A stretch of DNA of 64,000 nt, taken from the NCBI GenBank assembly GCA_950097015.1, contig CATNEN010000027.1:910286-974285 (forward strand), given 5' to 3'. The position numbers were made by a program, and so were the translations under genes. The notes beneath the pieces are model-generated. The model saw only the letters and a list, made by a program, of their open reading frames with translations, was not told the DNA's origin and did no database searches. Origin of the DNA: Macrostomum hystrix (lineage: Eukaryota > Animalia > Platyhelminthes). Positions 34,446-64,000 of this stretch are shown piece by piece (the stretch's first letter is position 1; every line of letters starts with the position of its first letter).

Positions 34446-36064
34446 TTAGGCAAATTATATCAAAAGAACTGCTTTGTATCTGCTTCCAATCAAAATCTGT
34501 CACCATTTAAATCAGAAAAATGGAAACTTTCCTGTCTGTAGTGCGTTTTTTCGCGAAAACCAGCCTTTAATTTTTTCTAAAAACGTATATAGTTCCCGTC
34601 CTTCTACTGCTTCACACTACGGGCTTGAGAGCTGCGGTCTAATGTAAAAAATATATTTTAGTAATGATCATAGCAATTATCCAGTAATTCTAGAATCTAA
34701 TTATATTTAGTTAGTAATTATATCATAGTAAAAAACGCGGCACAAAAAAGTTTTTGACTAAAAGGTTCAATATACTTTTGTAAACTTTTAGCTATCAAAG
34801 TAGAAAGTTCAGTCTTTGGCAATTTGCGACGTCTTACAATATTGCGCCGTTTAGCAGGGTTTATTTATAAGAAAAACAAAAGCAGCGTAATATTTTTTAA
34901 GATCAACATATACATCAACAAAGCTACCAAATTTCTTTTTATATATTTGCAAATCAAGAGTCCTTTAACTTAAAAAGCCTTATAATATTTTCTTTTAAAT
35001 GTTTTTTTTACTATTTTCCTAGTGCGTGCGTGCGTCACGAGGTCTCAAGTGTTAAGCGTCGAATTCACAATAGTGATTGTTGTTTCTAGTCAACTAGTTT
35101 CTAGTTGTTTCTAGTTTCTAGTCTAGAAACCGAAGATTAGAACGATGCATGACTGAATATGATTATTTGTTAGATCTTTTACATTAATTGCATTTCCTGC
35201 CTATTAATTGCATAGATAGTCTTATCTTGACTTCTATGTTTGACTTCTTTGACTCAAAGCACTTTGACTTTGACTTCGACGCTCGGACCCCTCGTTTCGG
35301 TTTTTTTCGGCGCTACGTTGACTGCCTGCTAAGCGACGCCGAAGGCCGTGGCGCCAGACACTGCCTACGGGGGGGAATTTGTTCGCACGCTGGCTCTGCG
35401 CTGCGCCATTTGACGCAACCTCCCTGACTTTTGGGGCATACGTCCTTTGTTGTTGTTGTTGACTCGTACTAAAGTTACAGTACTTGTAGAGCAAGTTTCC
35501 ATTATTATCGTTATTGATGAATGTGCAGCTAAGCATGCAGATGCAACTAAGAAAAAAAGGGCTGTAGCTAAGGTTGAAAGTGCAGCAGCTAAGGACGTCT
35601 ATACTTCCAGTACCAGAACCAGTACCAGAACCAGTACCAGAAAAAAATTATGTTATAGCCAACAAAAAATCGACAAGCAACTAATAAAAAGACTTCTAAC
35701 AGATGAAATACTTATATATCGGTCCGAAAATATCATTATTGAGAATAAAATTAATAAATATCGACGGACTTGCGCACAACACACAAAAAATGGTTTACTT
35801 TCACAAAACGTTTTTTAATATATTTTTTCATAGAATAAAACAAATTTGCTCAACCAACTGAGTAAACGAATACAAAAAGCGGTTTACTAAATATCGCAAC
35901 TACTAAAATCACAACTCAAAACTCACCTCATTAAATGTGTTTGTAAAATTTATTTTTTTTATAATCATCGTAAACTTCATCAAAAAAACTAAAAATATAA
36001 CCTCACTTTTGCGCTTCGCAGGATTATTACTCGTACATCATATACAGCTGAGAGCAATGATAAG

Positions 36065-39000
36065 GAAGGAAACATTATCTGTGAACACGGCTGTAAAATT
36101 TCAGAGCCCTGACGTGTCGCGTCTCGGAGTTGTAGACCCTCGAGTCCCCCCACTCTGATATCTCCCATTTTAAAAGTACTTTTCGTCACCTCACTGAATC
36201 TGGTGGTCAAAAGAAGCTGAAAACTCAGATCTGGAAGGAAACATTATCTGTGAACACGGCTGTAAAATTTCAGAGCCCTGACTAGTCGCGTCTCGGAGTT
36301 GTAGACCCTCGAGTCCCCCCCCACTCTGATATCTCCCATTTTAAAAGTACTTTTCGTCACCTCACTGAATCTGGTGGTCAGACGAGGCTAAAAACTCAGA
36401 TCTGGAAGGAAACATTATCTGTGAACACGGCTGTAAAATTTCAGAGCCCTGACTATTCGCGTCTCGGAGTTGTAGACCCTCGAGTCCCCCCCACTCTGAT
36501 ATCTCCCATTTTAAAAGTACTTTTCGTCACCTCACTGAATCTGGTGGTCAAAAGAAGCTGAAAACTCAGATCTGGAAGGAAACATTATCTGTGAACACGG
36601 CTGTAAAATTTCAGAGCCCTGACTAGTCGCGTCTCGGAGTTGTAGACCCTCGAGTCCCCCCCACTCTGATATCTCCCATTTTAAAAGTACTTTTCGTCAC
36701 CTCACTGAATCTGGTGGTCAGACGAGGCTAAAAACTTAGATCTGGAAGGAAACATTATCTGTAAACACGGCTGTAAAATTTCAGAGCCCTGACTATTCGC
36801 GTCTCGGAGTTGTAGACCCTCGAGTCCCCCCCACTCTGATATCTCCCATTTTAAAAGTACTTTTCGTCACCTCACTGAATCTGGTGGTCAAAAGAAGCTG
36901 AAAACTCAGATCTGGAAGGAAACATTATCTGTAAACACGGCTGTAAAATTTCAGAGCCCTGACTATTCGCGTCTCGGAGTTGTAGACCCTCGAGTCCCCC
37001 CCACTCTGATATCTCCCATTTTAAAAGTACTTTTCGTCACCTCACTGAATCTGGTGGTCAAAAGAAGCTGAAAACTCAGATCTGGAAGGAAACATTATCT
37101 GTAAACACGGCTGTAAAATTTCAGAGCCCTGACTATTCGCGTCTCGGAGTTGTAGACCCTCGAGTCCCCCCCACTCTGATATCTCCCATTTTAAAAGTAC
37201 TTTTCGTCACCTCACTGAATCTGGTGGTCAAAAGAAGCTGAAAACTCAGATCTGGAAGGAAACATTATCTGTGAACACGGCTGTAAAATTTCAGAGCCCT
37301 GACTAGTCGCGTCTCGGAGTTGTAGACCCTCGAGTCCCCCCCACTCTGATATCTCCCATTTTAAAAGTACTTTTCGTCACCTCACTGAATCTGGTGGTCA
37401 AAAGAAGCTGAAAACTCAGATCTGGAAGGAAACATTATCTGTGAACACGGCTGTAAAATTTCAGAGCCCTGACTAGTCACGTCTCGGAGTTGTAGACCCT
37501 CGAGTCCCCCCCACTCTGATATCTCCCATTTTAAAAGTACTTTTCGTCACCTCACTGAATCTGGTGGTCAAAAGAAGCTGAAAACTCAGATCTGGAAGGA
37601 AACATTATCTGTGAACACGGCTGTAAAATTTCAGAGCCCTGACTAGTCGCGTCTCGGAGTTGTAGACCCTCGAGTCCCCCCCACTCTGATATCTCCCATT
37701 TTAAAAGTACTTTTCGTCACCTCACTGAATCTGGTGGTCAGACGAGGCTAAAAACTCAGATCTGGAAGGAAACATTATCTGTGAACACGGCTGTAAAATT
37801 TCAGAGCCCTGACTATTCGCGTCTCGGAGTTGTAGACCCTCGAGTCCCCCCCACTCTGATATCTCCCATTTTAAAAGTACTTTTCGTCACCTCACTGAAT
37901 CTGGTGGTCAAAAGAAGCTGAAAACTCAGATCTGGAAGGAAACATTATCTGTGAACACGGCTGTAAAATTTCAGAGCCCTGACTAGTCGCGTCTCGGAGT
38001 TGTAGACCCTCGAGTCCCCCCCACTCTGATATCTCCCATTTTAAAAGTACTTTTCGTCACCTCACTGAATCTGGTGGTCAGACGAGGCTAAAAACTTAGA
38101 TCTGGAAGGAAACATTATCTGTAAACACGGCTGTAAAATTTCAGAGCCCTGACTATTCGCGTCTCGGAGTTGTAGACCCTCGAGTCCCCCCCACTCTGAT
38201 ATCTCCCATTTTAAAAGTACTTTTCGTCACCTCACTGAATCTGGTGGTCAAAAGAAGCTGAAAACTCAGATCTGGAAGGAAACATTATCTGTAAACACGG
38301 CTGTAAAATTTCAGAGCCCTGACTATTCGCGTCTCGGAGTTGTAGACCCTCGAGTCCCCCCCACTCTGATATCTCCCATTTTAAAAGTACTTTTCGTCAC
38401 CTCACTGAATCTGGTGGTCAAAAGAAGCTGAAAACTCAGATCTGGAAGGAAACATTATCTGTAAACACGGCTGTAAAATTTCAGAGCCCTGACTATTCGC
38501 GTCTCGGAGTTGTAGACCCTCGAGTCCCCCCCACTCTGATATCTCCCATTTTAAAAGTACTTTTCGTCACCTCACTGAATCTGGTGGTCAAAAGAAGCTG
38601 AAAACTCAGATCTGGAAGGAAACATTATCTGTGAACACGGCTGTAAAATTTCAGAGCCCTGACTAGTCGCGTCTCGGAGTTGTAGACCCTCGAGTCCCCC
38701 CCACTCTGATATCTCCCATTTTAAAAGTACTTTTCGTCACCTCACTGAATCTGGTGGTCAAAAGAAGCTGAAAACTCAGATCTGGAAGGAAACATTATCT
38801 GTGAACACGGCTGTAAAATTTCAGAGCCCTGACTAGTCACGTCTCGGAGTTGTAGACCCTCGAGTCCCCCCCACTCTGATATCTCCCATTTTAAAAGTAC
38901 TTTTCGTCACCTCACTGAATCTGGTGGTCAGACGAGGCTAAAAACTCAGATCTGGAAGGAAACATTATCTGTAAACACGGCTGTAAAATTTCAGAGCCCT

Positions 39001-42000
39001 GACTATTCGCGTCTCGGAGTTGTAGACCCTCGAGTCCCCCCCACTCTGATATCTCCCATTTTAAAAGTACTTTTCGTCACCTCACTGAATCTGGTGGTCA
39101 AAAGAAGCTGAAAACTCAGATCTGGAAGGAAACATTATCTGTGAACACGGCTGTAAAATTTCAGAGCCCTGACTAGTCGCGTCTCGGAGTTGTAGACCCT
39201 CGAGTCCCCCCCACTCTGATATCTCCCATTTTAAAAGTACTTTTCGTCACCTCACTGAATCTGGTGGTCAGACGAGGCTAAAAACTTAGATCTGGAAGGA
39301 AACATTATCTGTAAACACGGCTGTAAAATTTCAGAGCCCTGACTATTCGCGTCTCGGAGTTGTAGACCCTCGAGTCCCCCCCACTCTGATATCTCCCATT
39401 TTAAAAGTACTTTTCGTCACCTCACTGAATCTGGTGGTCAAAAGAAGCTGAAAACTCAGATCTGGAAGGAAACATTATCTGTAAACACGGCTGTAAAATT
39501 TCAGAGCCCTGACTATTCGCGTCTCGGAGTTGTAGACCCTCGAGTCCCCCCCACTCTGATATCTCCATTTTAAAAGTACTTTTCGTCACCTCACTGAATC
39601 TGGTGGTCAAAAGAAGCTGAAAACTCAGATCTGGAAGGAAACATTATCTGTGAACACGGCTGTAAAATTTCAGAGCCCTGACTAGTCGCGTCTCGGAGTT
39701 GTAGACCCTCGAGTCCCCCCACTCTGATATCTCCCATTTTAAAAGTACTTTTCGTCACCTCACTGAATCTGGTGGTCAGACGAGGCTAAAAACTCAGATC
39801 TGGAAGGAAACATTATCTGTAAACACGGCTGTAAAATTTCAGAGCCCTGACTAGTCGCGTCTCGGAGTTGTAGACCCTCGAGTCCCCCCCACTCTGATAT
39901 CTCCCATTTTAAAAGTACTTTTCGTCACCTCACTGAATCTGGTGGTCAAAAGAAGCTGAAAACTCAGATCTGGAAGGAAACATTATCTGTGAACACGGCT
40001 GTAAAATTTCAGAGCCCTGACTAGTCGCGTCTCGGAGTTGTAGACCCTCGAGTCCCCCCCACTCTGATATCTCCCATTTTAAAAGTACTTTTCGTCACCT
40101 CACTGAATCTGGTGGTCAAAAGAAGCTGAAAACTCAGATCTGGAAGGAAACATTATCTGTAAACACGGCTGTAAAATTTCAGAGCCCTGACTATTCGCGT
40201 CTCGGAGTTGTAGACCCTCGAGTCCCCCCCACTCTGATATCTCCCATTTTAAAAGTACTTTTCGTCACCTCACTGAATCTGGTGGTCAAAAGAAGCTGAA
40301 AACTCAGATCTGGAAGGAAACATTATCTGTAAACACGGCTGTAAAATTTCAGAGCCCTGACTATTCGCGTCTCGGAGTTGTAGACCCTCGAGTCCCCCCA
40401 CTCTGATATCTCCCATTTTAAAAGTACTTTTCGTCACCTCACTGAATCTGGTGGTCAGACGAGGCTAAAAACTCAGATCTGGAAGGAAACATTATCTGTA
40501 AACACGGCTGTAAAATTTCAGAGCCCTGACTAGTCGCGTCTCGGAGTTGTAGACCCTCGAGTCCCCCCCACTCTGATATCTCCCATTTTAAAAGTACTTT
40601 TCGTCACCTCACTGAATCTGGTGGTCAAAAGAAGCTGAAAACTCAGATCTGGAAGGAAACATTATCTGTAAACACGGCTGTAAAATTTCAGAGCCCTGAC
40701 TATTCGCGTCTCGGAGTTGTAGACCCTCGAGTCCCCCCCACTCTGATATCTCCCATTTTAAAAGTACTTTTCGTCACCTCACTGAATCTGGTGGTCAAAA
40801 GAAGCTGAAAACTCAGATCTGGAAGGAAACATTATCTGTAAACACGGCTGTAAAATTTCAGAGCCCTGACTATTCGCGTCTCGGAGTTGTAGACCCTCGA
40901 GTCCCCCCCACTCTGATATCTCCCATTTTAAAAGTACTTTTCGTCACCTCACTGAATCTGGTGGTCAAAAGAAGCTGAAAACTCAGATCTGGAAGGAAAC
41001 ATTATCTGTAAACACGGCTGTAAAATTTCAGAGCCCTGACTATTCGCGTCTCGGAGTTGTAGACCCTCGAGTCCCCCCCACTCTGATATCTCCCATTTTA
41101 AAAGTACTTTTCGTCACCTCACTGAATCTGGTGGTCAAAAGAAGCTGAAAACTCAGATCTGGAAGGAAACATTATCTGTAAACACGGCTGTAAAATTTCA
41201 GAGCCCTGACTATTCGCGTCTCGGAGTTGTATACCCTCGAGTCCCCCCCACTCTGATATCTCCCATTTTAAAAGTACTTTTCGTCACCTCACTGAATCTG
41301 GTGGTCAAAAGAAGCTGAAAACTCAGATCTGGAAGGAAACATTATCTGTGAACACGGCTGTAAAATTTCAGAGCCCTGACTATTCGCGTCTCGGAGTTGT
41401 AGACCCTCGAGTCCCCCCCACTCTGATATCTCCCATTTTAAAAGTACTTTTCGTCACCTCACTGAATCTGGTGGTCAAAAGAAGCTGAAAACTCAGATCT
41501 GGAAGGAAACATTATCTGTGAACACGGCTGTAAAATTTCAGAGCCCTGACTAGTCGCGTCTCGGAGTTGTAGACCCTCGAGTCCCCCCCACTCTGATATC
41601 TCCCATTTTAAAAGTACTTTTCGTCACCTCACTGAATCTGGTGGTCAGACGAGGCTGAAAACTCAGATCTGGAAGGAAACATTATCTGTAAACACGGCTG
41701 TAAAATTTCAGAGCCCTGACTATTCGCGTCTCGGAGTTGTAGACCCTCGAGTCCCCCCCACTCTGATATCTCCCATTTTAAAAGTACTTTTCGTCACCTC
41801 ACTGAATCTGGTGGTCAGACGAGGCTAAAAACTCAGATCTGGAAGGAAACATTATCTGTAAACACGGCTGTAAAATTTCAGAGCCCTGACTATTCGCGTC
41901 TCGGAGTTGTAGACCCTCGAGTCCCCCCCACTCTGATATCTCCCATTTTAAAAGTACTTTTCGTCACCTCACTGAATCTGGTGGTCAAAAGAAGCTGAAA

Positions 42001-45000
42001 ACTCAGATCTGGAAGGAAACATTATCTGTAAACACGGCTGTAAAATTTCAGAGCCCTGACTATTCGCGTCTCGGAGTTGTAGACCCTCGAGTCCCCCCCA
42101 CTCTGATATCTCCCATTTTAAAAGTACTTTTCGTCACCTCACTGAATCTGGTGGTCAAAAGAAGCTGAAAACTCAGATCTGGAAGGAAACATTATCTGTA
42201 AACACGGCTGTAAAATTTCAGAGCCCTGACTATTCGCGTCTCGGAGTTGTAGACCCTCGAGTCCCCCCCACTCTGATATCTCCCATTTTAAAAGTACTTT
42301 TCGTCACCTCACTGAATCTGGTGGTCAAAAGAAGCTGAAAACTCAGATCTGGAAGGAAACATTATCTGTGAACACGGCTGTAAAATTTCAGAGCCCTGAC
42401 TAGTCGCGTCTCGGAGTTGTAGACCCTCGAGTCCCCCCCACTCTGATATCTCCCATTTTAAAAGTACTTTTCGTCACCTCACTGAATCTGGTGGTCAAAA
42501 GAAGCTGAAAACTCAGATCTGGAAGGAAACATTATCTGTGAACACGGCTGTAAAATTTCAGAGCCCTGACTAGTCACGTCTCGGAGTTGTAGACCCTCGA
42601 GTCCCCCCCACTCTGATATCTCCCATTTTAAAAGTACTTTTCGTCACCTCACTGAATCTGGTGGTCAGACGAGGCTAAAAACTCAGATCTGGAAGGAAAC
42701 ATTATCTGTAAACACGGCTGTAAAATTTCAGAGCCCTGACTATTCGCGTCTCGGAGTTGTAGACCCTCGAGTCCCCCCCACTCTGATATCTCCCATTTTA
42801 AAAGTACTTTTCGTCACCTCACTGAATCTGGTGGTCAAAAGAAGCTGAAAACTCAGATCTGGAAGGAAACATTATCTGTGAACACGGCTGTAAAATTTCA
42901 GAGCCCTGACTAGTCGCGTCTCGGAGTTGTAGACCCTCGAGTCCCCCCCACTCTGATATCTCCCATTTTAAAAGTACTTTTCGTCACCTCACTGAATCTG
43001 GTGGTCAGACGAGGCTAAAAACTTAGATCTGGAAGGAAACATTATCTGTAAACACGGCTGTAAAATTTCAGAGCCCTGACTATTCGCGTCTCGGAGTTGT
43101 AGACCCTCGAGTCCCCCCCACTCTGATATCTCCCATTTTAAAAGTACTTTTCGTCACCTCACTGAATCTGGTGGTCAAAAGAAGCTGAAAACTCAGATCT
43201 GGAAGGAAACATTATCTGTAAACACGGCTGTAAAATTTCAGAGCCCTGACTATTCGCGTCTCGGAGTTGTAGACCCTCGAGTCCCCCCCACTCTGATATC
43301 TCCCATTTTAAAAGTACTTTTCGTCACCTCACTGAATCTGGTGGTCAAAAGAAGCTGAAAACTCAGATCTGGAAGGAAACATTATCTGTGAACACGGCTG
43401 TAAAATTTCAGAGCCCTGACTAGTCGCGTCTCGGAGTTGTAGACCCTCGAGTCCCCCCACTCTGATATCTCCCATTTTAAAAGTACTTTTCGTCACCTCA
43501 CTGAATCTGGTGGTCAGACGAGGCTAAAAACTCAGATCTGGAAGGAAACATTATCTGTAAACACGGCTGTAAAATTTCAGAGCCCTGACTAGTCGCGTCT
43601 CGGAGTTGTAGACCCTCGAGTCCCCCCCACTCTGATATCTCCCATTTTAAAAGTACTTTTCGTCACCTCACTGAATCTGGTGGTCAAAAGAAGCTGAAAA
43701 CTCAGATCTGGAAGGAAACATTATCTGTGAACACGGCTGTAAAATTTCAGAGCCCTGACTAGTCGCGTCTCGGAGTTGTAGACCCTCGAGTCCCCCCCAC
43801 TCTGATATCTCCCATTTTAAAAGTACTTTTCGTCACCTCACTGAATCTGGTGGTCAAAAGAAGCTGAAAACTCAGATCTGGAAGGAAACATTATCTGTAA
43901 ACACGGCTGTAAAATTTCAGAGCCCTGACTATTCGCGTCTCGGAGTTGTAGACCCTCGAGTCCCCCCCACTCTGATATCTCCCATTTTAAAAGTACTTTT
44001 CGTCACCTCACTGAATCTGGTGGTCAAAAGAAGCTGAAAACTCAGATCTGGAAGGAAACATTATCTGTAAACACGGCTGTAAAATTTCAGAGCCCTGACT
44101 ATTCGCGTCTCGGAGTTGTAGACCCTCGAGTCCCCCCACTCTGATATCTCCCATTTTAAAAGTACTTTTCGTCACCTCACTGAATCTGGTGGTCAGACGA
44201 GGCTAAAAACTCAGATCTGGAAGGAAACATTATCTGTAAACACGGCTGTAAAATTTCAGAGCCCTGACTAGTCGCGTCTCGGAGTTGTAGACCCTCGAGT
44301 CCCCCCCACTCTGATATCTCCCATTTTAAAAGTACTTTTCGTCACCTCACTGAATCTGGTGGTCAAAAGAAGCTGAAAACTCAGATCTGGAAGGAAACAT
44401 TATCTGTGAACACGGCTGTAAAATTTCAGAGCCCTGACTAGTCGCGTCTCGGAGTTGTAGACCCTCGAGTCCCCCCCACTCTGATATCTCCCATTTTAAA
44501 AGTACTTTTCGTCACCTCACTGAATCTGGTGGTCAGACGAGGCTAAAAACTTAGATCTGGAAGGAAACATTATCTGTAAACACGGCTGTAAAATTTCAGA
44601 GCCCTGACTATTCGCGTCTCGGAGTTGTAGACCCTCGAGTCCCCCCCACTCTGATATCTCCAATTTTAAAAGTACTTTTCGTCACCTCACTGAATCTGGT
44701 GGTCAAAAGAAGCTGAAAACTCAGATCTGGAAGGAAACATTATCTGTAAACACGGCTGTAAAATTTCAGAGCCCTGACTATTCGCGTCTCGGAGTTGTAG
44801 ACCCTCGAGTCCCCCCCACTCTGATATCTCCCATTTTAAAAGTACTTTTCGTCACCTCACTGAATCTGGTGGTCAAAAGAAGCTGAAAACTCAGATCTGG
44901 AAGGAAACATTATCTGTAAACACGGCTGTAAAATTTCAGAGCCCTGACTATTCGCGTCTCGGAGTTGTAGACCCTCGAGTCCCCCCCACTCTGATATCTC

Positions 45001-52826: not shown

Positions 52827-53394
52827 GGGCACAACACAACACCCTCACTCTGAGATGCCTGCGTATTTTTAGCGTTGAGTTGCGCAACATGTAGGGATGT
52901 AATGCGCAATTGGTAATACAGGGTAATATTTTTGCCTTGTCGTGCACATGGGTCTCAATTTTTGCATGTTGGATCTGATTTTTGCTATTTGTTTTTTTAT
53001 TATTTGAAGTACTAATGCCCTCTTATGTTTGTCGGCTTTTGAGGCTTTAGCGTTTGAAGTTGAGTGTTGAGATTTCAAGCCTCGTGTTTTATAGTCTTCG
53101 CATTATTAAAAGCCTTCGTATTTTATAGTGACGATTGCGTATCCTCTATTGCATTTAGTTCTTAGTGCTTTGTCCTTACGTTTTATCGCTAATGCCTGAC
53201 AAAATAAGTGTTCTGGGGTGTGTACCGTGCTCTGTTTTACACTAGTAGCTGGAATATCCAATCAGCTGCTTTATCTGCTTCTTGCTTGCTATCTCATATC
53301 CCTATCCGAACAACCCATGCATAAATTTTCGAGTATAAAGCCTTGAGGAAAGCAGATTTCAATCGTCTGCTAGTATATTCATATATTTTTAACC

Positions 53395-56300
53395 ATGATT
53401 TTCAGTCTTCGCATCATTGCTTTACTTTCAATTTTCTTTATTTCCAAAGCAACCCACAATCGACGCATTTCTTTTTTTGAACTGTCGCCTGAATATTTTG
53501 AAGACTATAGTGATGAGTGCCTTGGCAAATCATTTCGCTGTCCCTATGGTGCTTGCGGGCAAATTCTGAGCAAGCTTTCAGCAAAGAACACTATTGAAAA
53601 CCGTCGAGTTGTCTGGCTTTATTATCAGCGTAAAATTGTCGGTAAGTCAAAATCTTCTGTTTCGAAAAGAAAGAAAACTGCTAATCATAAATCTGCTGTG
53701 GTAAGATCCACTCGAGTTGCTGTTGCTGCTTCTGTTGTGCCTGGCCGTGGTGCTGTTGCTGCTTCTGTTGTGCCTGCTCGTCGTGCTGTTGCTGCTTCTG
53801 TTGTGCCTGCCCGGGGTGCTGTTGCTGCTTCTGTTGTGCCTGCTCGTCGTGCTGTTGCTGCTTCTGTTGTGCCTGCCCGGGGTGCTGTTGCTGCTTCTGT
53901 TGTGCCTGCCCGGGTGCTGTTGCTGCTTCTGTTGTGCCTGCTCGTCGTGCTGTTGCTGCTTCTGTTGTGCCTGCCCGGGGTGCTGTTGCTGCTTCTGTTT
54001 TGCCTGCTCGTCGTGCTGTTGCTGCTTCTGTTGTGCCTGCTCGTCGTGCTGTTGCTGCTTCTGTTGTGCCTGCCCGTCGTGCTGTTGCTGCTTCTGTTGT
54101 GCCTGCCCGGGGTGCTGTTGCTGCTTCTGTTGTGCCTGCTCGTCGTGCTGTTGCTGCTTCTGTTGTGCCTGCCCGGGGTGCTGTTGCTGCTTCTGTTGTG
54201 CCTGCTCGTCGTGCTGTTGCTGCTTCTGTTGTGCCTGCCCGGGGTGCTGTTGCTGCTTCTGTTGTGCCTGCTCGTCGTGCTGTTGCTGCTTCTGTTGTGC
54301 CTGCTCGTCGTGCTGTTGCTGCTTCTGTTGAGCCTGCCCGTCGTGCTGTTGCTGCTTCTGTTGTGCCTGCCCGGGGTGCTGTTGCTGCTTCTGTTGTGCC
54401 TGCTCGTCGTGCTGTTGCTGCTTCTGTTGTGCCTGCCCGGGGTGCTGTTGCTGCTTCTGTTGTGCCTGCTCGTCGTGCTGTTGCTGCTTCTGTTGTGCCT
54501 GCCCGGGGTGCTGTTGCTGCTTCTGTTGTGCCTGCTCGTCGTGCTGTTGCTGCCTCTGTTGTGCCTGCCCGGGGTGCTGTTGCTGCTTCTGTTGTGCCTG
54601 CTCGTCGTGCTGTTGCTGCTTCTGTTGTGCCTGCCCGGGGTGCTGTTGCTGCTTCTGTTGTGCCTGCCCGTGGTGCTGTTGCTGCTTCTGTTGTGCCTGC
54701 CCGTGGTGCTGTTGCTGCTTCTGTTGTGCCTGCCCGTCGTGCTGTTGCTGCTTATGTGGGGCCTGCTCATGGAAGTAATGACGCTTGTGGTGATGATATG
54801 AGTGATTCTAGGAGTGGTGATGCTGGGAGTGATGATGCTGGGAGTGAGGATGCTGGGAGTGATGATGGTTGGAGTGATGATGCTGGGAGTGAGGATGCTG
54901 GGAGTGATGATGCTGGGAGTGAGGATGCTGGGAGTGATGATGCTGGGAGTGAGGATGCTGGGAGTGATGATGGTTGGAGTGATGATGCTGGGAGTGATGA
55001 TTCAGAAGTAAGGGACTGTACTAATGCTGAAGTTGCTGTTGATTTCGAGAGTGGTGCAAGCGGATCAATAACTAATTTAGTTTTTCATTTTCGAATAGCT
55101 TGGAGCCAGTGGAAAAATAACTTTTTTATCAGGCGGGGAGAAAAAATGCATTCGATATGTCAGAGAACCGCTTTTTGGTGGCTAAACTGCATTCGTGAAA
55201 ATTATCGACAATATTGCTCTTCGAATGTGGAAGCAAGTAACTGTGTTCTTAAATTTAAGAATCGATATCTGAACTTTCCAAATCTCAGAGCACAAAAGCC
55301 AAAATATTTCGTAAAACAGGTCGCATTATGCCAGCATCCCGCATGCAAAATAGTACACGATTTTAGAATTATAGATTTTCCAACTGAAAATGAGCCTGTG
55401 GTGGTAGTTGTTAATTCTAAAGGTGAGAAGAATCATAATCATCCAACGATGTCTAGAATGACGCCATTAGAATCAGAAAGGATAGCAAAACTACTTGAAA
55501 CTGAAGCACCAACTGATGTACATGATAGACTACTCTCGGAAATGACAGATAAAGAGATAAAGGAAAATGACTTTTCTCGATCAAAAAATTTGGATGCCAT
55601 TCGGCGGGTAAACGCGAAGCGGTTGGTTGCCGCAGAAGAACGGCTGCATAAAAATGTTGAAGTCGAAATTGCTGCTTTGCAACGAATACTGAGCGAAACA
55701 GACACAGAGAGTAAGAGTATACGCGGATACATTCAAGCTGTGTCTCGCCATCCATTTCATGTACATCTGTACCTCGAAAGACAGCTTAGACTTGTTACAA
55801 GTAGGCCGCAGTGTGTTTTACATCTAGATGCCACTGGAAGCATTTTCAAGAGAATGAAATTTCGCAGGTAGCCAAATATTTCTTACTCGCTGACAATGCC
55901 TCCGATAACGGTCAGACGCGTGGTGTGCCTAGTGGCCGAAATGATAACAAGTGAGCATAGGACCAAATCAATCCAACACTTTTTGTTTTCTGTCGCGCAG
56001 ATTTGGGCCACAACTAGCAAGCAGTACTATTATGTCGCATGACTATTTACCCGCTGTCAATCGTCACGGACTTCTCTTGGCATTGTTACATTCGTATGCC
56101 AGTCAATTTGGCACCCAGCTTAGAGCAATACCTTATTGATACGCATTGTGCGTTACGCATGGGGAAACAAATCAAGTACACGATTCCATTCATTTGCACA
56201 AATCACGTAATCCGTGCGTTCATTAATGGCATACAACTAAAGTCTAAAACTGCGAAGGCTAAAGCTATGCGGGGAATTATTTATTAGCGCATTTGTCTTT

Positions 56301-57819
56301 TTATTACATCAGGAGATTTTGAAGCGTTTGAAACTACCTTGAGTCTCACTGTAGATACATTTTTAGGGCAGCGAGATCCGAAAGAATTAAGATCAGCGAT
56401 TAACAATTGGGAAACTGAGCCCGTGGACGAAGAATATTCGCTCTACAACGACGATGAAATAATAACGATAAGGAAGAGCAGGCCGAAAGTTCTCGATTTG
56501 TTCTCTGCGCAAGGCTCTCCGTACATTTTTCTTTTCAAGTCCCGACAGGCAAGTATTGATGCAACCGACGAGCCAGCCGGGCCAATTTAAAAGCTATACT
56601 CACCAAAACTGCTGGTTTACTTGCTGAAGCACTGGTGTAGTTTAGGCTCCATTGTTTCTGCCATTTCATCGGGAGTATCAAGAGCTTCAGAAAGAATAAA
56701 GGTTGGTTTTCAAACTCTTACGTAGAATCGTTACTTTTCAGACGTTAAATCTCGAAAAACAAGGTTCGGCAAGGCTTCCAGGGTGAACGTGTCGAGTTTT
56801 ATTTGCGGACGGTTAAAATATTTAAAAACAAGATTAACAGCTTTCGACATAATCAACAAAGTAGGGAAAGCAACGTTATCTGGAAGGAGAGAAAGCACGA
56901 AGATATTTCCTTTTCTCGCGAGGAGTGGCGAAGGGCCGAGCGGGTTAGTCGTTCAAAGTACAAGCGACAGAGAACAGAATCAGCGACAAAGAATAGAAAG
57001 CAGCAAGGCACAGCAGAACGGGAACCAGGTGTGGTGCACCCGCGCTGGAGACTTCCTAACTGAGGTTTGATAGAGAATCATTGGAACCCGGAAAGTGGCT
57101 TTCTGTCGGAATAGTAATTCATTCATACATCTACTTTGCGTATGCAACCCAAGCAGCAAAGCGGGCCACCTACCATCCAGCTTCTTTACTGCATTCGCAA
57201 GGAGATTCGAGCGCTGCGATTGACATGCTAAGAGCGACAGTTTCAAACAAATGCACCCGTTTAATCTGTCCGATTCTTCAGAACGACCACTTCTACTTAG
57301 TCTATATTGACACAACACGCAAAGAACTAGCTGTCCTAGACACAAAAACCTATCTCAGATAAGTCGATACCAAAACATTTTATAAAAACTATGGCAAAAC
57401 CTAATCAAAAGCACCACCAGTATTCGCGAAGACATGCCAGAAATTTTAGGTACGTATAAAAAATAAATCAATGTTGAGATCATTGCAGTTTGATGGTCAT
57501 AGCTGGGGGTATTTGTCTGTCTGTACGCGAAAGTTCTAGTAACATCCGTGATAGAGTTCCGAGCTTTGTGCTTTCCAACAACGGAGGGATTTCTTAACAG
57601 AGCTCGAATGCATCTGGAAAGACTTGGAAAGAGAAAATGAAGAATCCACCAACTCGTGCGTTCGCTGTCATGAAGCTGAACCCAGTGCGACTGGAACTTG
57701 GCTGCAATGTGATCTTTGTGATTCATGGCTGCACCATGAGTGGCATCGAAAGATATGCACCAGCGCCACGCGCCAACGGCTACGTCTGCTGCTGTGCCGA
57801 GTACGCAGCAACGCGATAG
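53395..57819 (+). CDS. MULE/NOF-like DDE transposase fused to a Ulp1 (C48) protease and a PHD finger; about 1470 aa if about a dozen small indels are corrected
   Basis: WRKY/GCM1-type Zn finger CQHPAC...NHNH; D1 LHLDATGS (55827); YSL..VAEMITSEH..I..FL; D2 IVTDFSW/ALL (56069); CxxH ICTNH (56195); E in SNSYVES.FSDVK (56725); Ulp1 HFYLVYID (57288), VLD (57339), QFDGHS[C]GVFV (57486); PHD (57657-57800). AATAAA at 57891. Confidence 0.8.
53715..54752 (+). repeat. 33-bp coding minisatellite (AVAASVVPARR/G), about 31 copies, within the transposase N-terminus
   Basis: GCTGTTGCTGCTTCTGTTGTGCCTGCTCGTCGT repeated; one G missing at about 53913 shifts the frame. Confidence 0.95.
54790..55000 (+). repeat. 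15-bp coding repeat (DDAGS/EDAGS/DDGWS), acidic tract in the transposase
   Basis: GATGATGCTGGGAGT repeated in frame. Confidence 0.9.
57090..57560 (+). other. Ulp1/SENP-like peptidase C48 domain (frameshifted)
   Basis: WLS...I..Y start; ICPILQNDHFYLVYIDTTRKELAVLD; QFDGHS-C-GVFVCLYAK is restored by inserting a single T at 57506. Confidence 0.75.
57654..57819 (+). other. PHD finger (C4HC3-like), one extra G
   Basis: CVRC...WLQCDLCDSWLHHE[C]IERYAPAPRANGYVCCC; removing one G at about 57742 joins the two ORF-track frames. Confidence 0.75.
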
Positions 57820-58277
57820 CTGGATGGATGCACCAAGAAGTGCAGCGAAAAAATGTATACACACTAATTACTAAAAGCTACTTGCTTAAAAATAAAATGT
57901 CAATTCTGTAGTTTTGTTATAACAACAAGTCAATTCTGTAAACAATTATGGCACCGCTTTGCAATGTAAAACTGTGAATAATCTAAGCTGCAAATATTAT
58001 AAGACATATGCAAATAGTGGCCTTTGTGTGACACAGAACACTAATACGAACAAAAACCTTAAAAAAAAACAAAAATCTTCTAAAACCGAACTTAAAAATA
58101 TATTAAAGACTTTGTGAAAAAACTCTGCCTTAGCCAGTCCCAAGCCTGGTTCAAAAAGAGGAGGGCTCACGAAAAAATTACCAAAAAGCAAATCTTAAAT
58201 TATATTCAGTAAAATCAAAAAAATGAAACTACAAAAAAATACAGACTACAAAAACAATAGCTCCTTCGAAACCTCAT

Positions 58278-61200
58278 TTTTCAGCTTCTTTTGACCACCA
58301 GATTCAGTGAGGTGACGAAAAGTACTTTTAAAATGGGAGATATCAGAGTGGGGGGGACTCGAGGGTCTACAACTCCGAGACGCGAATAGTCAGGGCTCTG
58401 AAATTTTACAGCCGTGTTTACAGATAATGTTTCCTTCCAGATCTGAGTTTTCAGCTTCTTTTGACCACCAGATTCAGTGAGGTGACGAAAAGTACTTTTA
58501 AATGGGAGATATCAGAGTGGGGGGGACTCGAGGGTCTACAACTCCGAGACGCGAATAGTCAGGGCTCTGAATTTTACAGCCGTGTTTACAGATAATGTTT
58601 CCTTCCAGATCTGAGTTTTCAGCTTTTCTTTGACCACCAGATTCAGTGAGGTGACGAAAAGTACTTTTAAAATGGGAGATATCAGAGTGGGGGGGACTCG
58701 AGGGTCTACAACTCCGAGACGCGACTAGTCAGGGCTCTGAAATTTACAGCCGTGTTCACAGATAATGTTTCCTTCCAGATCTGAGTTTTCAGCTTCGTTT
58801 GACCACCAGATTCAGTGAGGTGACGAAAAGTACTTTTAAAATGGGAGATATCAGAGTGGGGGGGACTCGAGGGTCTACAACTCCGAGACGCGACTAGTCA
58901 GGGCTCTGAAATTTTACAGCCGTGTTACAGATAATGTTTCCTTCCAGATCTGAGTTTTTCAGCCTCGTCTGACCACCAGATTCAGTGAGGTGACGAAAAG
59001 TACTTTTAAAATGGGAGATATCAGAGGGGGGACTCGAGGGTCTACAACTCCGAGACGCGACTAGTCAGGGCTCTGAAATTTTACAGCCGTGTTCACAGAT
59101 AATGTTTCCTTCCAGATCTGAGTTTTCAGCTTCTTTTGACCACCAGATTCAGTGAGGTGACGAAAAGTACTTTTAAAATGGGAGATATCAGAGTGGGGGG
59201 GACTCGAGGGTCTACAACTCCGAGACGCGAATAGTCAGGGCTCTGAAATTTTACAGCCGTGTTCACAGATAATGTTTCCTTCCAGATCTGAGTTTTCAGC
59301 TTCTTTTGACCACCAGATTCAGTGAGGTGACGAAAAGTACTTTTAAAATGGGAGATATCAGAGTGGGGGGACTCGAGGGTCTACAACTCCGAGACGCGAC
59401 TAGTCAGGGCTCTGAAATTTTACAGCCGTGTTCACAGATAATGTTTCCTTCCAGATCTGAGTTTTCAGCTTCTTTGACCACCAGATTCAGTGAGGTGACG
59501 AAAAGTACTTTTAAAATGGGAGATATCAGAGTGGGGGGGACTCGAGGGTCTACAACTCCGAGACGCGAATAGTCAGGGCTCTGAAATTTTACAGCCGTGT
59601 TCACAGATAATGTTTCCTTCCAGATCTGAGTTTTTAGCCTCGTTGACCACCAGATTCAGTGAGGTGACGAAAAGTACTTTTAAAATGGGAGATATCAGAG
59701 TGGGGGGGACTCGAGGGTCTACAACTCCGAGACGCGACTAGTCAGGGCTCTGAAATTTTACAGCCGTGTTCACAGATAATGTTTCCTTCCAGATCTGAGT
59801 TTTCAGCTTCTTTTGACCACCAGATTCAGTGAGGTGACGAAAAGTACTTTTAAAATGGGAGATATCAGAGTGGGGGGGACTCGAGGGTCTACAACTCCGA
59901 GACGCGACTAGTCAGGGCTCTGAAATTTTACAGCCGTGTTCACAGATAATGTTTCCTTCCAGATCTGAGTTTTCAGCTTCTTTTGACCACCAGATTCAGT
60001 GAGGTGACGAAAAGTACTTTTAAAATGGGAGATATCAGAGTGGGGGGGACTCGAGGGTCTACAACTCCGAGACGCGACTAGTCAGGGCTCTGAAATTTAC
60101 AGCCGTGTTTACAGATAATGTTTCCTTCCAGATCTGAGTTTTCTTTCAGCTTCTTTTGACCACCAGATTCAGTGAGGTGACGAAAAGTACTTTTAAAATG
60201 GGAGATATCAGAGTGGGGGGGACTCGAGGGTCTACAACTCCGAGACGCGAATAGTCAGGGCTCTGAAATTTTACAGCCGTGTTTACAGATAATGTTTCCT
60301 TCCAGATCTGAGTTTTCAGCCTCTTTTGACCACCAGATTCAGTGAGGTGACGAAAAGTACTTTTAAAATGGGAGATATCAGAGTGGGGGGGACTCGAGGG
60401 TCTACAACTCCGAGACGCGAATAGTCAGGGCTCTGAAATTTACAGCCGTGTTTACAGATAATGTTTCCTTCCAGATCTGAGTTTTCAGCTTCTTTTGACC
60501 ACCAGATTCAGTGAGGTGACGAAAAGTACTTTTAAAATGGGAGATATCAGAGTGGGGGGGACTCGAGGGTCTACAACTCCGAGACGCGAATAGTCAGGGC
60601 TCTGAAATTTTACAGCCGTGTTACAGATAATGTTTCCTTCCAGATCTGAGTTTTCAGCCTCTTTGACCACCAGATTCAGTGAGGTGACGAAAAGTACTTT
60701 TAAAATGGGAGATATCAGAGTGGGGGGGACTCGAGGGTCTACAACTCCGAGACGCGACTAGTCAGGGCTCTGAAATTTTACAGCCGTGTTCACAGATAAT
60801 GTTTCCTTCCAGATCTGAGTTTTCAGCTTCGTCTGACCACCAGATTCAGTGAGGTGACGAAAAGTACTTTTAAAATGGGAGATATCAGAGTGGGGGGACT
60901 CGAGGGTCTACAACTCCGAGACGCGACTAGTCAGGGCTCTGAAATTTACAGCCGTGTTTACAGATAATGTTTCCTTCCAGATCTGAGTTTTCAGCTTCTT
61001 TTGACCACCAGATTCAGTGAGGTGACGAAAAGTACTTTTAAAATGGGAGATATCAGAGTGGGGGGGACTCGAGGGTCTACAACTCCGAGACGCGAATAGT
61101 CAGGGCTCTGAAATTTACAGCCCGTGTTTACAGATAATCATTCCAGATCTGAGTTTTCAGCTTCTTTTGACCACCAGATTCAGTGAGGTGACGAAAAGTA

Positions 61201-64000
61201 CTTTTAAAATGGGAGATATCAGAGTTGGGGGGGACTCGAGGGTCTACAACTCCGAGACGCGAATAGTCAGGGCTCTGAAATTTTACAAGCGTGTTTACAG
61301 ATAATGTTTCCTTCAGATCTGAGTTTTAGCTTCTTTTGACCACCAGATTCAGTGAGGTGAGCGAAAGTACTTTTAAAATGGGAGATATCAGAGTGGGGGG
61401 GACTCGAGGGGTCTACAACTCCGAGACGCGAATTAGTCAGGGCTCTGAAATTTTACAGCCGTGTTTACAGATAATGTTTCCCTTCCAGATCTGAGTTTTC
61501 AGCTTCTTTTGACCACCAGATTCAGTGAGGTGACGAAAATTACTTTTAAAATGGGAGATATCAGAGTGGGGGGGACTCGAGGGTCTACAACTCCGAGACG
61601 CGACTAGTCAGGTCTCTGAAATTTTACAGCCTGTTCACAGATAATGTTTCCTTCCAGATCTGATTTTTCAGCTTCTTTTTGACCACCAATTCAGTGAGGT
61701 GACGAAAAAGTACTTTTAAAATGGGAGATATCAGAGTGGGGGGGACTCGAGGTCTACAACTCCGAGACGCGACTAGTCAGGGCTCTGAAATTTTACAGCC
61801 GTGTTTACAGATAATGTTTCCTTCCAGATCTGAGTTTTTAGCCTCGTCCTGACCACCAGATTCAGTGAGGTGACGAAAGTACTTTTAAAATGGGAGATAT
61901 CAGAGTGGGGGGGACTCGAGGGGTCTACAACTCCGAGACGCGACTAATCAGGGCTCTGAAATTTTACAGCCGTGTTCACAGATAATGTTTCCTTCCAGAT
62001 CTGAGTTTTCAGCTTCTTTTTGACACCCAGATTCAGTGAGGTGACGGAAAAAGTACTTTTAAAATGGGAGATATCAGAGTGGGGGGGACTCGAGGGTCTA
62101 CAACTCCGAGACGCGATAGTCAGGGTCTGAAATTTACAGCCGTGTTTACAGATAATGTTTCCTTCCAGATCTTGAGTTTTCAGCTTCTTTTGACCACCAG
62201 ATTCAGTGAGGTGACGAAAAGTACTTTTAAAATGGGAGATATCAGAGTGGGGGGGACTCGAGGGTCTACAACTCCGAGACGCGAATAGTCAGGGCTCTGA
62301 AATTTTACAGCCGTGTTTACAGATAATGTTTCCTTCCAGATCTGAGTTTTCAGCTTCTTTTGACCACCAGATTCAGTGAGGTGACGAAAGTACTTTTAAA
62401 ATGGGAGATATCAGAGTGGGGGGACTCGAGGGTCTACAACTCCGAGACGCGAATAGTCAGGGCTCTGAAATTTTACAGCCGTGTTTACAGATAATGTTTC
62501 CTTCCAGATCTGAGTTTTCAGCTTCTTTTGACCACCAGATTCAGTGAGGTGACGAAAAGTACTTTTAAAAGGGGAGATATCAGAGTGGGGGGGACTCGAG
62601 GGTCTACAACTCCGAGACGCGACTAGTCAGGGCTCTGAAATTTTACAGCCGTGTTCACAGATAATGTTTCCTTCCAGATCTGAGTTTTCAGCTTCTTTGA
62701 CCAACAGATTCAGTGAGGTGACGAAAAAGTACTTTTAAATGGGAGATATCAGAGTGGGGGGGACTCGAGGGTCTACAACTCCGAGGACGCGACTAGTCAG
62801 GCTCTGAAATTTTACAGCCGTGTTTACAGATAATGTTTCCTTCCAGATCTGAGTTTTTAGCTCGTTGACCACCAGATTCAGTGAGGTGACGAAAGTACTT
62901 TTAAAATGGGAGATATCAGAGTGGGGGGACTCGAGGGTCTACAACTCCGAGACGCGACTAGTCAGGGCTCTGAAATTTTACAGCCGTGTTCACCAGATAA
63001 TGTTTCCTTCCAGATCTGAGTTTTCAGCTTCTTTTGACCACCAGATTCAGTGAGGTGACGAAAAGTACTTTTAAAATGGGAGATATCAGAGTGGGGGGGA
63101 CTTCGAGGGTCTACAACTCCGAGACGCGACTAGTCAGGGCTCTGAAATTTACAGCCGTGTTCACAGATAATGTTTCCTTCCAGATCTGAGTTTTCTAGCC
63201 TCGTCTGACCACCAGATTCAGTGAGTGACGAAAAGTACTTTTAAAATGGGAGATATCAGAGTGGGGGGGACTCGAGGGTCTACAACTCGAGACGCGACTA
63301 GTCAGGGCTCTGAAATTTTACAGCCGTGTTTCACAGATAATGTTTCCTTCCAGATCTGAGTTTTTCAGCTTCTTTTGACCACCAGATTCAGTGAGGTGAC
63401 GAAAAGTACTTTTAAAATGGGAGATATCAGAGTGGGGGGGACTCGAGGGTCTACAACTCCGAGACGCGACTAGTCAGGGCTCTGAAATTTTACAGCCGTG
63501 TTCACAGATAATGTTTCCTTCCAGATCTGAGTTTTCAGCCTCGTCTGACCACCAGATTCAGTGAGGTGACGAAAAGTACTTTTAAAATGGGAGATATCAG
63601 AGTGGGGGGACTCGAGGGTCTACAACTCCGAGACGCGACTAGTCAGGGGCTCTGAAATTTTACAGCCGTGTTCACAGATAATGTTTCCTTCCAGATCTGA
63701 GTTTCCAGCTTCTTTTGACCACCAGATTCAGTGAGGTGACGAAAAGTACTTTTAAAATGGGAGATATCAGAGTGGGGGGGGACTCGAGGGTCTACAAACT
63801 CCGAGACGCGAATAGTCAGGGCTCTGAAATTTTACAGCCGGTTTACAGATAATGTTTCCTTCCAGATCTGAGTTTTCAGCTTCTTTTGACCACCAGATTC
63901 AGTGAGGTGACGAAAAGTACTTTTAAATGGGAGATATCAGAGTGGGGGGGACTCGAGGGTCTACAACTCCGAGACGCGAATAGTCAGGGCTCTGAAATTT
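58278..64000 (-). repeat. 170-bp satellite array, inverted (right arm), at least 33 copies, truncated by the window end
   Basis: Reverse complement of the left-arm unit (TTCAGCTTCTTTTGACCACCAGATTCAGTGAGG...); many 1-nt indels. Confidence 0.97.

What the first reader, a model, noticed from the sequence alone, without database searches (positions are those of the whole stretch)
36065..64000. Giant foldback Mutator transposon whose terminal inverted repeats are multi-kb satellite arrays
Seen in the sequence: about 98 tandem 170-bp units pointing inward, a 5.4-kb unique core, then at least 33 units in the opposite orientation, with a MULE DDE transposase in the core. Established, from recall: Rehavkus-group MULEs and Drosophila FB-NOF have TIRs built of tandem repeats around such a gene. 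Inference: here the arms have grown to 16.8 kb and at least 5.7 kb, much longer than I recall for described members, making an element over 28 kb. This is a direct snapshot of a transposon generating satellite DNA, and a potential large cruciform or rearrangement hotspot.
Basis: partly seen in the sequence, partly recalled or inferred. Interest (0 to 1): 0.92.

Follow-up and report, generated by a model that had tools for sequence, protein, structure and literature searches.

The report
Foldback transposon with satellite arms
A transposase gene of the Drosophila NOF / Mutator kind sits between two oppositely oriented arrays of a 170-bp satellite (16.8 kb and at least 5.7 kb), a very large example of the known foldback transposons whose end repeats grow into satellite DNA.

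Summary
There are 98.7 units of a 170-bp repeat at 36064-52826, a 5.4-kb core, and at least 33.8 inverted units from 58262 to the window's end. No units occur elsewhere in the window.

The core has no inverted ends of its own. It carries one + strand gene with a WRKY-like zinc finger, a DDE domain with D, D, CxxH and E, a weak Ulp1 remnant and a weak PHD finger.

Pfam's MULE models do not match the gene or its relatives. A predicted structure of a 34%-identical relative matches Drosophila NOF best (Foldseek E 1.6e-23), then domesticated MULE proteins and an IS256-family transposase.

Relatives elsewhere also sit beside 168-209-bp arrays. One has inverted arms. In another, three copies carry 2.4, 15 and at least 31 units.

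The gene looks broken in the window. Several breaks coincide with sites where short-read contigs from four public runs differ in the compensating way, so much of the damage is probably consensus error.

One short-read contig confirms the right inner junction. The left inner junction, the right outer end and any target duplication are untested.

Satellite-filled inverted termini over 11 kb are already published (Tribolium Rehavkus-like elements; Tetris; FB). This is a large new member of a known kind. Other scan notes report similar 170-bp foldbacks elsewhere in this genome; I could not check them.

The parts
36064..52826 (+). Left arm: 98.7 head-to-tail units of the 170-bp satellite (16,763 bp). 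The first unit is the most diverged, and the last unit is cut at unit position 115.
   Evidence: Mean pairwise unit identity is 98.0%, with a weak higher-order period of 22 units.
52827..53717 (+). Left part of the core. It is unique and non-coding by homology. An ATG ORF starts at 53395, but no homology supports it.
   Evidence: There is no similarity to the satellite unit or to the right core end.
53718..55001 (+). Two internal minisatellites (33 bp x31.8 at 53718-54766; 15 bp x13.3 at 54803-55001). They lie in the same open frame as the transposase N-terminus, but ORFs are open across the 33-bp array in all three + frames (and one on the - strand), so coding is not shown.
55083..57033 (+). 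Transposase homology region. WRKY-like zinc finger: C 55242, C 55329, C 55344, H 55434. DDE domain: D1 55827, D2 56069, C 56195 .. H 56204, E codon GAA at 56724-56726.
   Evidence: phmmer gives 152 relatives, best E 6e-24. tblastn results are. The frameshift-aware alignment gives 34% identity over 585 residues to P0004.
57249..57908 (+). Weak C-terminal remnant, collinear with the Ulp1 (Peptidase_C48) and PHD-finger region of relatives. It is heavily interrupted as written in the window.
   Evidence: tblastn of P0152 residues 869-1026 gives E 0.019. P0152 has C48 at 863-964 and PHD at 993-1053. Pfam PHD in the window scores E 7.5e-4, below the curated cut-off.
57909..58261 (+). A-rich right end of the core. 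Several public contigs leave the window's sequence here.
   Evidence: One search shows loose ends at 58157 and 58169 and a drop in depth over 58025-58266.
58262..64000 (-). Right arm: at least 33.8 units of the same satellite in the opposite orientation, cut by the window's end. The innermost about 60 bp are diverged (85%).
   Evidence: It has 9 times more single-base indels per unit than the left arm. A short-read contig in run X4 crosses the junction (57977-58305).

Best explanation
This is one copy of a foldback-type DNA transposon of the NOF/Rehavkus branch of the Mutator superfamily. A central gene encodes a transposase with a WRKY-like zinc finger, an RNase-H-like DDE domain, a Ulp1-type protease and a PHD finger. 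The gene is flanked by two inverted arms, which were originally subterminal tandem repeats of the element. They are inferred, not shown, to be transposase-binding repeats. Each arm has grown independently, by unequal exchange or replication slippage, into a kilobase-scale array of an element-specific 170-bp satellite. Shown here: the inverted arrays, the lack of core-own inverted ends, the family of the gene, and variable array length in copies of a related element. Inferred: that the arms belong to the element, that they grew in place, and that growth was by unequal exchange. Unknown: the true termini, the target duplication, and whether this copy can still move.
For: The arrays are inverted and confined to the two sides of the core. 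The core has no inverted repeats at its own edges, and the two inner junctions fall at different unit phases, which excludes a simple insertion into a direct array. The gene has 152 relatives. Their nearly invariant D, D, CxxH, E and CCCH residues are present in the window. The structure model of relative P0004 (pLDDT 78.9) matches Drosophila NOF first (E 1.6e-23), then MULE-derived proteins and Ulp1/SENP, and ISCth4 in the PDB. The protein atlas also places relatives next to NOF-FB clusters. Among relatives, L008 has inverted arms of an about 200-bp repeat around the gene. Copies of the P0001 element carry 2.4, 15 and at least 31 units of a 186-bp repeat. L002 has at least 5.6 kb of a 174-bp array next to the gene. 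The right inner junction is seen in an independent short-read contig. Summed satellite word depth is only about 320-2000 times the core depth in X1 and X4, so the satellite is not a major genome component; this estimate is rough. Unit order in the inner 31 units of the right arm does not mirror the left arm in any register, and the left arm has its own period of 22 units, which fits separate growth of each arm.
Against: The right outer end is outside the window, so no terminal inverted sequence or target duplication could be examined. The left inner junction has no independent read support; the junction 60-mer search had only 2 sampled words. In the best-delimited relative (L001: 14-bp inverted ends plus a 6-bp flanking repeat), the array is on one side only. 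In L019 the repeats are direct, not inverted. Inverted satellite arms are therefore not a constant of the family. Public contigs leave the window's sequence at 55025, 58157 and 58169, so copies or alleles of the core with other surroundings exist. The whole neighbourhood is 57-69% tandem repeat, so arrays may expand here regardless of any transposon.
Confidence: 0.68

Rival explanations
1. The 170-bp satellite is an independent host satellite. A NOF-type transposon remnant that has lost its own ends became trapped between two oppositely oriented blocks of it through an inversion or other rearrangement. The arms were never part of the element.
For: The region is extremely rich in unrelated tandem arrays. 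The inner junctions are asymmetric: the left arm is cut at unit position 115, and the right ends in a diverged unit. The unit shares no sequence with the core or the flank. Some relatives have one-sided or direct repeats. Other versions of the core's ends exist in public runs.
Against: This rival needs an insertion, loss of both ends and an inversion. Four unrelated relatives of the same transposase also sit beside 168-209-bp arrays, once in inverted arms. The satellite is of low abundance relative to the core (rough). No units occur anywhere else in 64 kb.
Confidence: 0.15
2. The inverted arrangement is larger than the arms. The locus is the centre of a big segmental palindrome (inverted duplication), in which the 170-bp arrays are only the innermost repeated part and the transposase-bearing core is the spacer.
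For: The right side beyond 64000 is unseen. Other notes of this scan report many inverted satellite pairs in this genome (unchecked).
Against: Nothing in the 36 kb left of the arm has an inverted copy within the window. The family of the core gene is itself known for foldback architecture.
Confidence: 0.08
3. Assembly artefact: the right-hand part from about 55.86 kb is a poorly polished or chimeric long-read extension, and the inverted right arm is wrongly joined.
For: From 55857 rightwards the window differs from short-read contigs of four runs by 39-45 one-base gaps per 2.7-3.0 kb, and the window's own letters have zero depth at the core differences listed. The right arm has 9 times more indels per unit than the left arm.
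Against: The contigs are collinear with the window over 55.0-58.06 kb. One contig in X4 crosses from the core 44 nt into the inverted satellite. A foldback chimeric read would give a perfect palindrome without a 5.4-kb asymmetric spacer.
Confidence: 0.06

Closest known systems
Drosophila melanogaster FB-NOF (foldback element with the NOF 120.7-kDa protein, UniProt P16320)
   Same: Both have inverted arms built of tandem repeats around a non-palindromic centre that encodes a large protein. NOF is the best structural match of the family: E 1.6e-23, 706 aligned columns, model residues 1-675 against NOF 142-746. The atlas cluster named after NOF carries Peptidase_C48 and PHD, like this family.
   Different: Sequence identity is only 17% in the structural alignment. 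From my own recall, FB arms are made of 10-31-bp repeats and are a few kb at most. Here the unit is 170 bp and one arm is 16.8 kb. The host is not Drosophila; relatives are in a sea cucumber and a mussel.
Rehavkus-like elements of Tribolium (TfSat06, TfSat25/TCsat12, TfSat15, TfSat23)
   Same: These are foldback DNA transposons with long inverted termini filled with satellite repeats. Repeat number varies between copies and species. Some termini exceed 11 kb, and one derived array reaches 80.5 kb. Rehavkus has a PHD finger and a minisatellite.
   Different: The Tribolium giant-arm elements are described as transposon-like with only partial similarity to Rehavkus-1_TC. Here a full transposase gene lies between the arms. 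The 16.8-kb arm is somewhat longer. No direct sequence comparison with Repbase Rehavkus entries was possible.
Tetris of Drosophila virilis
   Same: Tetris is a foldback element whose inverted repeats hold about 220-bp tandem repeats, and these also form kb-size satellite arrays.
   Different: Tetris arms reach only 1.7 kb. No transposase or autonomous copy is known, and the TIR-220 unit shares 37 bp with the flanking domain. Here no similarity between unit and flank was found.
Canonical Mutator-like elements (MuDR; Pfam MULE PF10551 / Transposase_mut PF00872)
   Same: The family shares the D-D-CxxH-E arrangement and an N-terminal WRKY/FLYWCH-type zinc finger. It has fold matches to MULE-derived FAR1/FHY3, alpha3 and ZSWIM proteins and to the IS256-family transposase ISCth4.
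   Different: There is no Pfam MULE match in the window pieces, none in 50 long relatives, and only one marginal hit (E 0.006) among 100 shorter relatives. Published trees use Rehavkus as an outgroup of MULEs.

Membership tests
Foldback-type transposon | Two long inverted arms made largely of tandem repeats | tested here: met
   99 plus-strand units on the left and 34 minus-strand units on the right. Mean identity between arms is 96.8%.
Foldback-type transposon | Defined outer termini with a target-site duplication | not testable with these tools
   The right arm runs off the window at 64000. A metagenome scan for the unit found nothing.
Foldback-type transposon | More than one copy at different loci (evidence of mobility) | tested here: inconclusive
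   Public contigs show other continuations at 55025, 58157 and 58169, and summed satellite word depth is 320-2000 times the core's. Two scan notes report a foldback of about 35 kb with 170-bp arms on another piece, but these are unchecked.
NOF / Rehavkus transposases | Homology to the NOF protein | tested here: met
   The test was made on relative P0004, which is 34% identical to the window's gene over 585 residues. Foldseek's top hit in Swiss-Prot models is NOF P16320, E 1.6e-23. The atlas places P0001 (0.97) and P0009 (0.88) next to NOF-FB clusters. The window's own protein was not modelled.
NOF / Rehavkus transposases | C-terminal PHD finger (and Ulp1 protease in many members) | tested here: inconclusive
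   In the window, PHD scores E 7.5e-4 at 19.9 bits against a cut-off of 24, and there is no C48 HMM hit. The region is collinear with the C48-PHD part of P0152 at E 0.019. In relatives, PHD is found in 11 of 50 and C48 in 7 of 50.
NOF / Rehavkus transposases | Tandem repeats next to the inverted ends | tested here: met
   This holds for the window and for relatives L001/L010/L011, L002 and L008.
Mutator superfamily (MULE) | Match to Pfam MULE (PF10551) or Transposase_mut (PF00872) | tested here: not met
   There is no hit in 7 window pieces at E up to 1 and none in 50 long relatives. Among 100 shorter relatives there is one marginal hit each (E about 0.005-0.006).
Mutator superfamily (MULE) | RNase-H-like DDE domain with CxxH after the second D, and a WRKY/FLYWCH-type N-terminal zinc finger | tested here: met
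   The family's nearly invariant residues are D, D, C..H, E and C, C, C, H. All are present in the window. Fold matches are to FAR1/FHY3, alpha3, ZSWIM3/9 and ISCth4.
Mutator superfamily (MULE) | Target-site duplication of about 9 bp | not testable with these tools
   The window lacks the right end. In relative L001 the repeat flanking the 14-bp inverted ends is 6 bp (CAATAT), not 9.
Satellite DNA | Long head-to-tail arrays of a unit of about 100-400 bp, homogenised, with higher-order structure | tested here: met
   The array is 16.8 kb with 98% unit identity and a period of 22 units (98.75% against about 97.9% at other lags).

The most novel reading that the evidence does not exclude
NOF-type transposons across distant animals repeatedly and independently build subterminal repeats in one narrow, nucleosome-sized length class. 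The units found are 168, 170, 174, 186 and about 200 bp, and the four compared directly (170, 174, 186, about 200 bp) share no sequence. If the transposase here is intact in the living animal, as the short-read version suggests, this would be an autonomous element with 17-kb satellite arms. That would point to a general, family-specific route from transposon ends to satellite DNA, constrained by unit length rather than by sequence.
Probability: 0.2. Interest if true: 0.6.

Novelty: new member of a known kind. Interest (0 to 1): 0.36.

Why it matters
The locus gives a clean example, outside insects, of the link between foldback transposons and satellite DNA, with the transposase gene still in place between the arms. 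The published giant-arm cases (Tribolium TfSat06 elements, Tetris) lack a recognised autonomous copy, so a family in which gene and satellite arms are linked would allow direct tests. One test is whether the transposase binds the repeat unit. Another is whether repeat number changes excision. Long inverted arrays are also likely sites of hairpin formation and rearrangement. The idea itself is already in the literature, so the value here is as material, not as a new principle.

Tried and rejected
- Pfam on the window's ORF pieces and on 150 relatives gave no usable MULE match. The classification had to come from structure.
- Word-indexed protein searches with the window's ORF, with P0001 and with the 50-sequence profile found no named relative and no same-genome copy.
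- A metagenome scan for a 25-mer of the unit gave 0 hits. A metagenome scan with the closest-subfamily alignment gave three contigs too short to use.
- A sequencing-run search with a 60-mer across the left inner junction listed none, but only 2 words were sampled, so it is uninformative.
- I applied the 11 deletions and 16 of the substitutions listed by read laying to a scratch copy of the core to see whether frames merged. Nothing was printed. I therefore used a frameshift-aware alignment instead.
- I found no similarity between the 170-bp unit and the flanks or core, and none between the units of different relatives.
- There is no mirror order of unit variants between the arms.
- There is no telomere repeat in the window.
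- My first reading, that the gene is a decayed pseudogene, is withdrawn. Several frameshifts and one stop coincide with compensating differences in short-read contigs.
- Simple insertion of a transposon into a direct satellite array is rejected, because the flanks are inverted, the junction phases differ and the core has no ends of its own.
- Look-ups of the scan's earlier findings by sequence were blank.
Full report
**Observation**

Tandem Repeats Finder reports a 170-bp period with 98.7 copies at 36064-52826 (97% matches, no indels). It reports 33.8 copies at 58278-64000 (95% matches, 2% indels), with a reverse-complement consensus. BLAST of one unit against the window gives 99 plus-strand hits, all in the left block, and 34 minus-strand hits, all in the right block. 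There are none elsewhere.

The left array starts abruptly at 36064 after AT-rich unique sequence. It ends inside a unit, at unit position 115, at 52826. The right array begins with a diverged piece at 58262. The core is therefore 52827-58261.

The inverted-repeat search finds no terminal inverted repeats at the edges of the core. A self-comparison of the window finds no other dispersed or inverted repeat. The right arm is cut by the window, so all sizes are lower bounds.

**The arms**

- Mean pairwise identity of units is 98.0% in the left arm, 95.7% in the right arm and 96.8% between arms. Both arms share the same variant types.
- The left arm shows a weak higher-order period of 22 units.
- The order of variants in the 31 innermost right-arm units does not mirror the left arm in any register. 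The best mirror register gives 97.84%, and a non-mirror control gives 97.93%. The arms look homogenised or expanded separately.
- The unit has no similarity to the flanks or the core.
- The right arm carries about nine times more single-base indels per unit than the left arm.

**The core gene**

A + strand reading frame is open from 53934 to 55868 and runs through two internal minisatellites. An exhaustive phmmer search with its last 289 residues finds 152 proteins at E up to 1e-3, with a best E of 6e-24. Many are 900-1350 residues long.

tblastn and a frameshift-aware alignment of my own place relative P0004, residues 2-621, on 55218-57033. Identity is 34% over 585 residues.

The family's nearly invariant residues are a C-C-C-H zinc finger, D ('DATGS'), D ('TDFSW'), CxxH and E ('VENWF..K'). 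All are found in the window at 55242, 55329, 55344, 55434, 55827, 56069, 56195/56204 and 56724.

The C-terminal part (57249-57734) is collinear with the Ulp1-PHD region of P0152, but only weakly (E 0.019). The PHD finger is below Pfam's cut-off.

**Is the gene broken?**

As written, the window needs 6-8 frameshifts and two stops between 55869 and 56885, and more breaks further on.

Logan contigs of four public runs carry the same core as single contigs of 2.7-3.1 kb (as several shorter pieces in X4). They differ from the window by 19-31 substitutions and 39-45 one-base gaps. At every core difference listed by read laying, the window's own letter has zero depth, and 9 of the 11 listed one-base deletions in the core are seen in all four runs.

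The listed differences coincide with the breaks:
- The contigs lack 56009 and 56012 where the alignment needs a 2-nt shift.
- They lack 56271 where it needs a 1-nt shift.
- They lack 56646 and 56655 where it needs a 2-nt shift.
- They read A for T at 56588, which removes that stop.

The differences start at 55857, twelve bases before the first stop, and most lie in short homopolymers. I conclude that much of the damage is consensus error in the window to the right of about 55.86 kb. The gene may be intact in the animals sequenced. The list of differences is incomplete, so I could not show a fully open frame.

**What family**

Pfam's MULE and Transposase_mut models do not match the window pieces. 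They match none of 50 long relatives, and one of 100 shorter relatives only marginally. PHD is found in 11 of 50 and Peptidase_C48 in 7 of 50.

An AlphaFold model of P0004 built on the 50-sequence alignment has mean pLDDT 78.9. Its matches are:
- Best Swiss-Prot structural match: the 120.7-kDa protein of the Drosophila NOF-FB element (E 1.6e-23, model residues 1-675).
- Next: K. lactis alpha3, FAR1-related proteins, FHY3 and ZSWIM proteins, which from established knowledge are domesticated Mutator-like transposases.
- C-terminal domain: Ulp1/SENP proteases.
- Solved structures: Ulp1/SENP, and the IS256-family transposase ISCth4 at E 5e-4.

The protein atlas independently puts P0001 and P0009 next to NOF-FB clusters and then MULE clusters.

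In the literature, Rehavkus was merged into MuDR on weak but significant similarity, and it is used as the outgroup of MULEs. It is characterised by a PHD finger and a minisatellite. The gene is therefore a NOF/Rehavkus-type transposase, a remote branch of the Mutator superfamily.

**Relatives' loci**

- Around P0009 (L008), the gene lies between inverted arms of an about 200-bp repeat: 2.8 units on the left and 4 on the right, running off the contig.
- Three copies of the P0001 element carry 2.4, 15 and at least 31 units of a 186-bp repeat just 3' of the gene.
- That element can be delimited in L001 by perfect 14-bp inverted ends at 478-491 and 17335-17348, flanked by CAATAT on both sides. 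About 205 bp of unique sequence lie outside the array, and there is no array on the 5' side.
- P0003 (L002) has at least 5.6 kb of a 174-bp array 5' of the gene.
- P0013 (L019) is surrounded by short 168-bp arrays in direct orientation.
- Other loci show nothing comparable.
- The units of the four families compared share no sequence.

Arrays of 168-209 bp next to the gene are frequent in the family, and their length varies between copies. Inverted arms on both sides are not universal.

**Read evidence on structure**

One contig of run X4 (331 nt, word depth 4.2 against about 10 for the core) spans 57977-58305. It crosses from the core into the inverted satellite.

Contigs of X1 and X2 leave the window's sequence at 58157 and 58169. 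The major version in X1 (word depth 362.4 beside 149.8 for the window-like contig) leaves it at 55025. Other alleles or copies with different surroundings therefore exist.

Summed satellite word depth is about 320-480 times the core's in X1 and about 1800-2000 times in X4. The tool warns that such sums are not copy numbers. Taken roughly, this means 0.05-0.3 Mb of this satellite per core copy, so it is not a major genome component.

The left inner junction could not be tested. Also, the junction 60-mer had only two sampled words.

**Mechanism**

The most likely history is that subterminal tandem repeats of a NOF-type element grew in each arm separately, by unequal exchange or slippage. The published cases propose that such repeats serve as extra transposase-binding sites. 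The neighbourhood is itself 57-69% tandem repeat.

Variable array length among copies of a related element shows that this kind of growth happens in the family. Binding of the unit by the transposase, the in-place growth and the present mobility of this copy are all inferences.

**Rivals**

- A remnant trapped between two blocks of a host satellite: 0.15.
- The centre of a larger palindrome: 0.08.
- A misjoin in a noisy part of the assembly: 0.06.

**Comparison with what is known**

Foldback elements with tandem-repeat arms date from Drosophila FB. Tetris showed such repeats becoming satellite arrays. In Tribolium, Rehavkus-like elements carry satellites in inverted termini that sometimes exceed 11 kb, and one derived array reaches 80.5 kb.

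The present locus has a somewhat longer arm, a full transposase gene between the arms and a non-insect host. Relatives occur in Holothuria and Mytilus. It adds no new principle.

Other notes of this scan mention a foldback of about 35 kb with 170-bp arms, mirror-ordered outer units, and a 15.3-kb foldback Mutator element on other pieces of the same genome. I could not check them.

**Verdict**

The structure is real and the family assignment is right at the remote level. The novelty is modest: this is a new member of a known kind.

Noticed in passing
window:1-36063: The 36 kb left of the element is 57% tandem repeat. It holds 14 distinct minisatellite arrays (units 10-193 bp, 0.3-5.1 kb each). 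None is repeated or inverted elsewhere in the window, there is no telomere repeat, and no Pfam match was found in 9 of the 10 ORFs tested (the 35447-35818 ORF had only a sub-threshold DUF5531 hit).
   Followed up: partly
window:55857-64000: From 55857 rightwards the window differs from short-read contigs of four public runs mostly by one-base indels at short homopolymers, about 40 per 2.7 kb. The right satellite arm has 9 times more indels per unit than the left. The consensus quality of the assembly seems to drop here.
   Followed up: yes
L001:478-17348: A relative's element (32% protein identity) is fully delimited. It is 16.9 kb with perfect 14-bp inverted ends (CACGTCCTATTTTC) and a 6-bp flanking repeat (CAATAT) rather than the 9 bp expected for Mutator/Rehavkus. 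Its 186-bp array lies only near the 3' end.
   Followed up: partly
L001:14208-17143, L010:4287-4733, L011:8768-14618: Three copies of one element in one environmental data set carry 15, 2.4 and at least 31 units of the same 186-bp repeat. This is direct evidence of fast change in array length between copies.
   Followed up: yes
L008:6736-7430 and L008:16517-17455: A second foldback member. The P0009 gene (1251 aa, N-terminal PHD) lies between inverted arms of an about 200-bp repeat at 96-97% identity. The right arm runs off the contig.
   Followed up: partly
L019:4474-17363: A homologous gene (P0013) is surrounded by blocks of about three 168-bp units in four main blocks (plus a fragment at 15172-15284), all in direct orientation. 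This may be a different repeat-carrying element around the gene.
   Followed up: no
window:36064-52826; L002:1-5582; L001:14208-17143; L008:6867-7430; L019:4474-5000: Unit lengths of the arrays beside related transposase genes cluster at 168-209 bp. The four units compared directly (window, L001, L002, L008) share no sequence.
   Followed up: partly
window:53718-55001: A 33-bp x31.8 array and a 15-bp x13.3 array lie in the same open frame as the transposase N-terminus. In run X1, contigs split here into two versions (word depth 362 and 150), so the region is polymorphic or present in two contexts.
   Followed up: partly
window:35447-35818: An ORF of 123 aa just left of the left arm has a weak, below-threshold Pfam hit to DUF5531 (E 4e-5; 24 bits against a cut-off of 25).
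   Followed up: no
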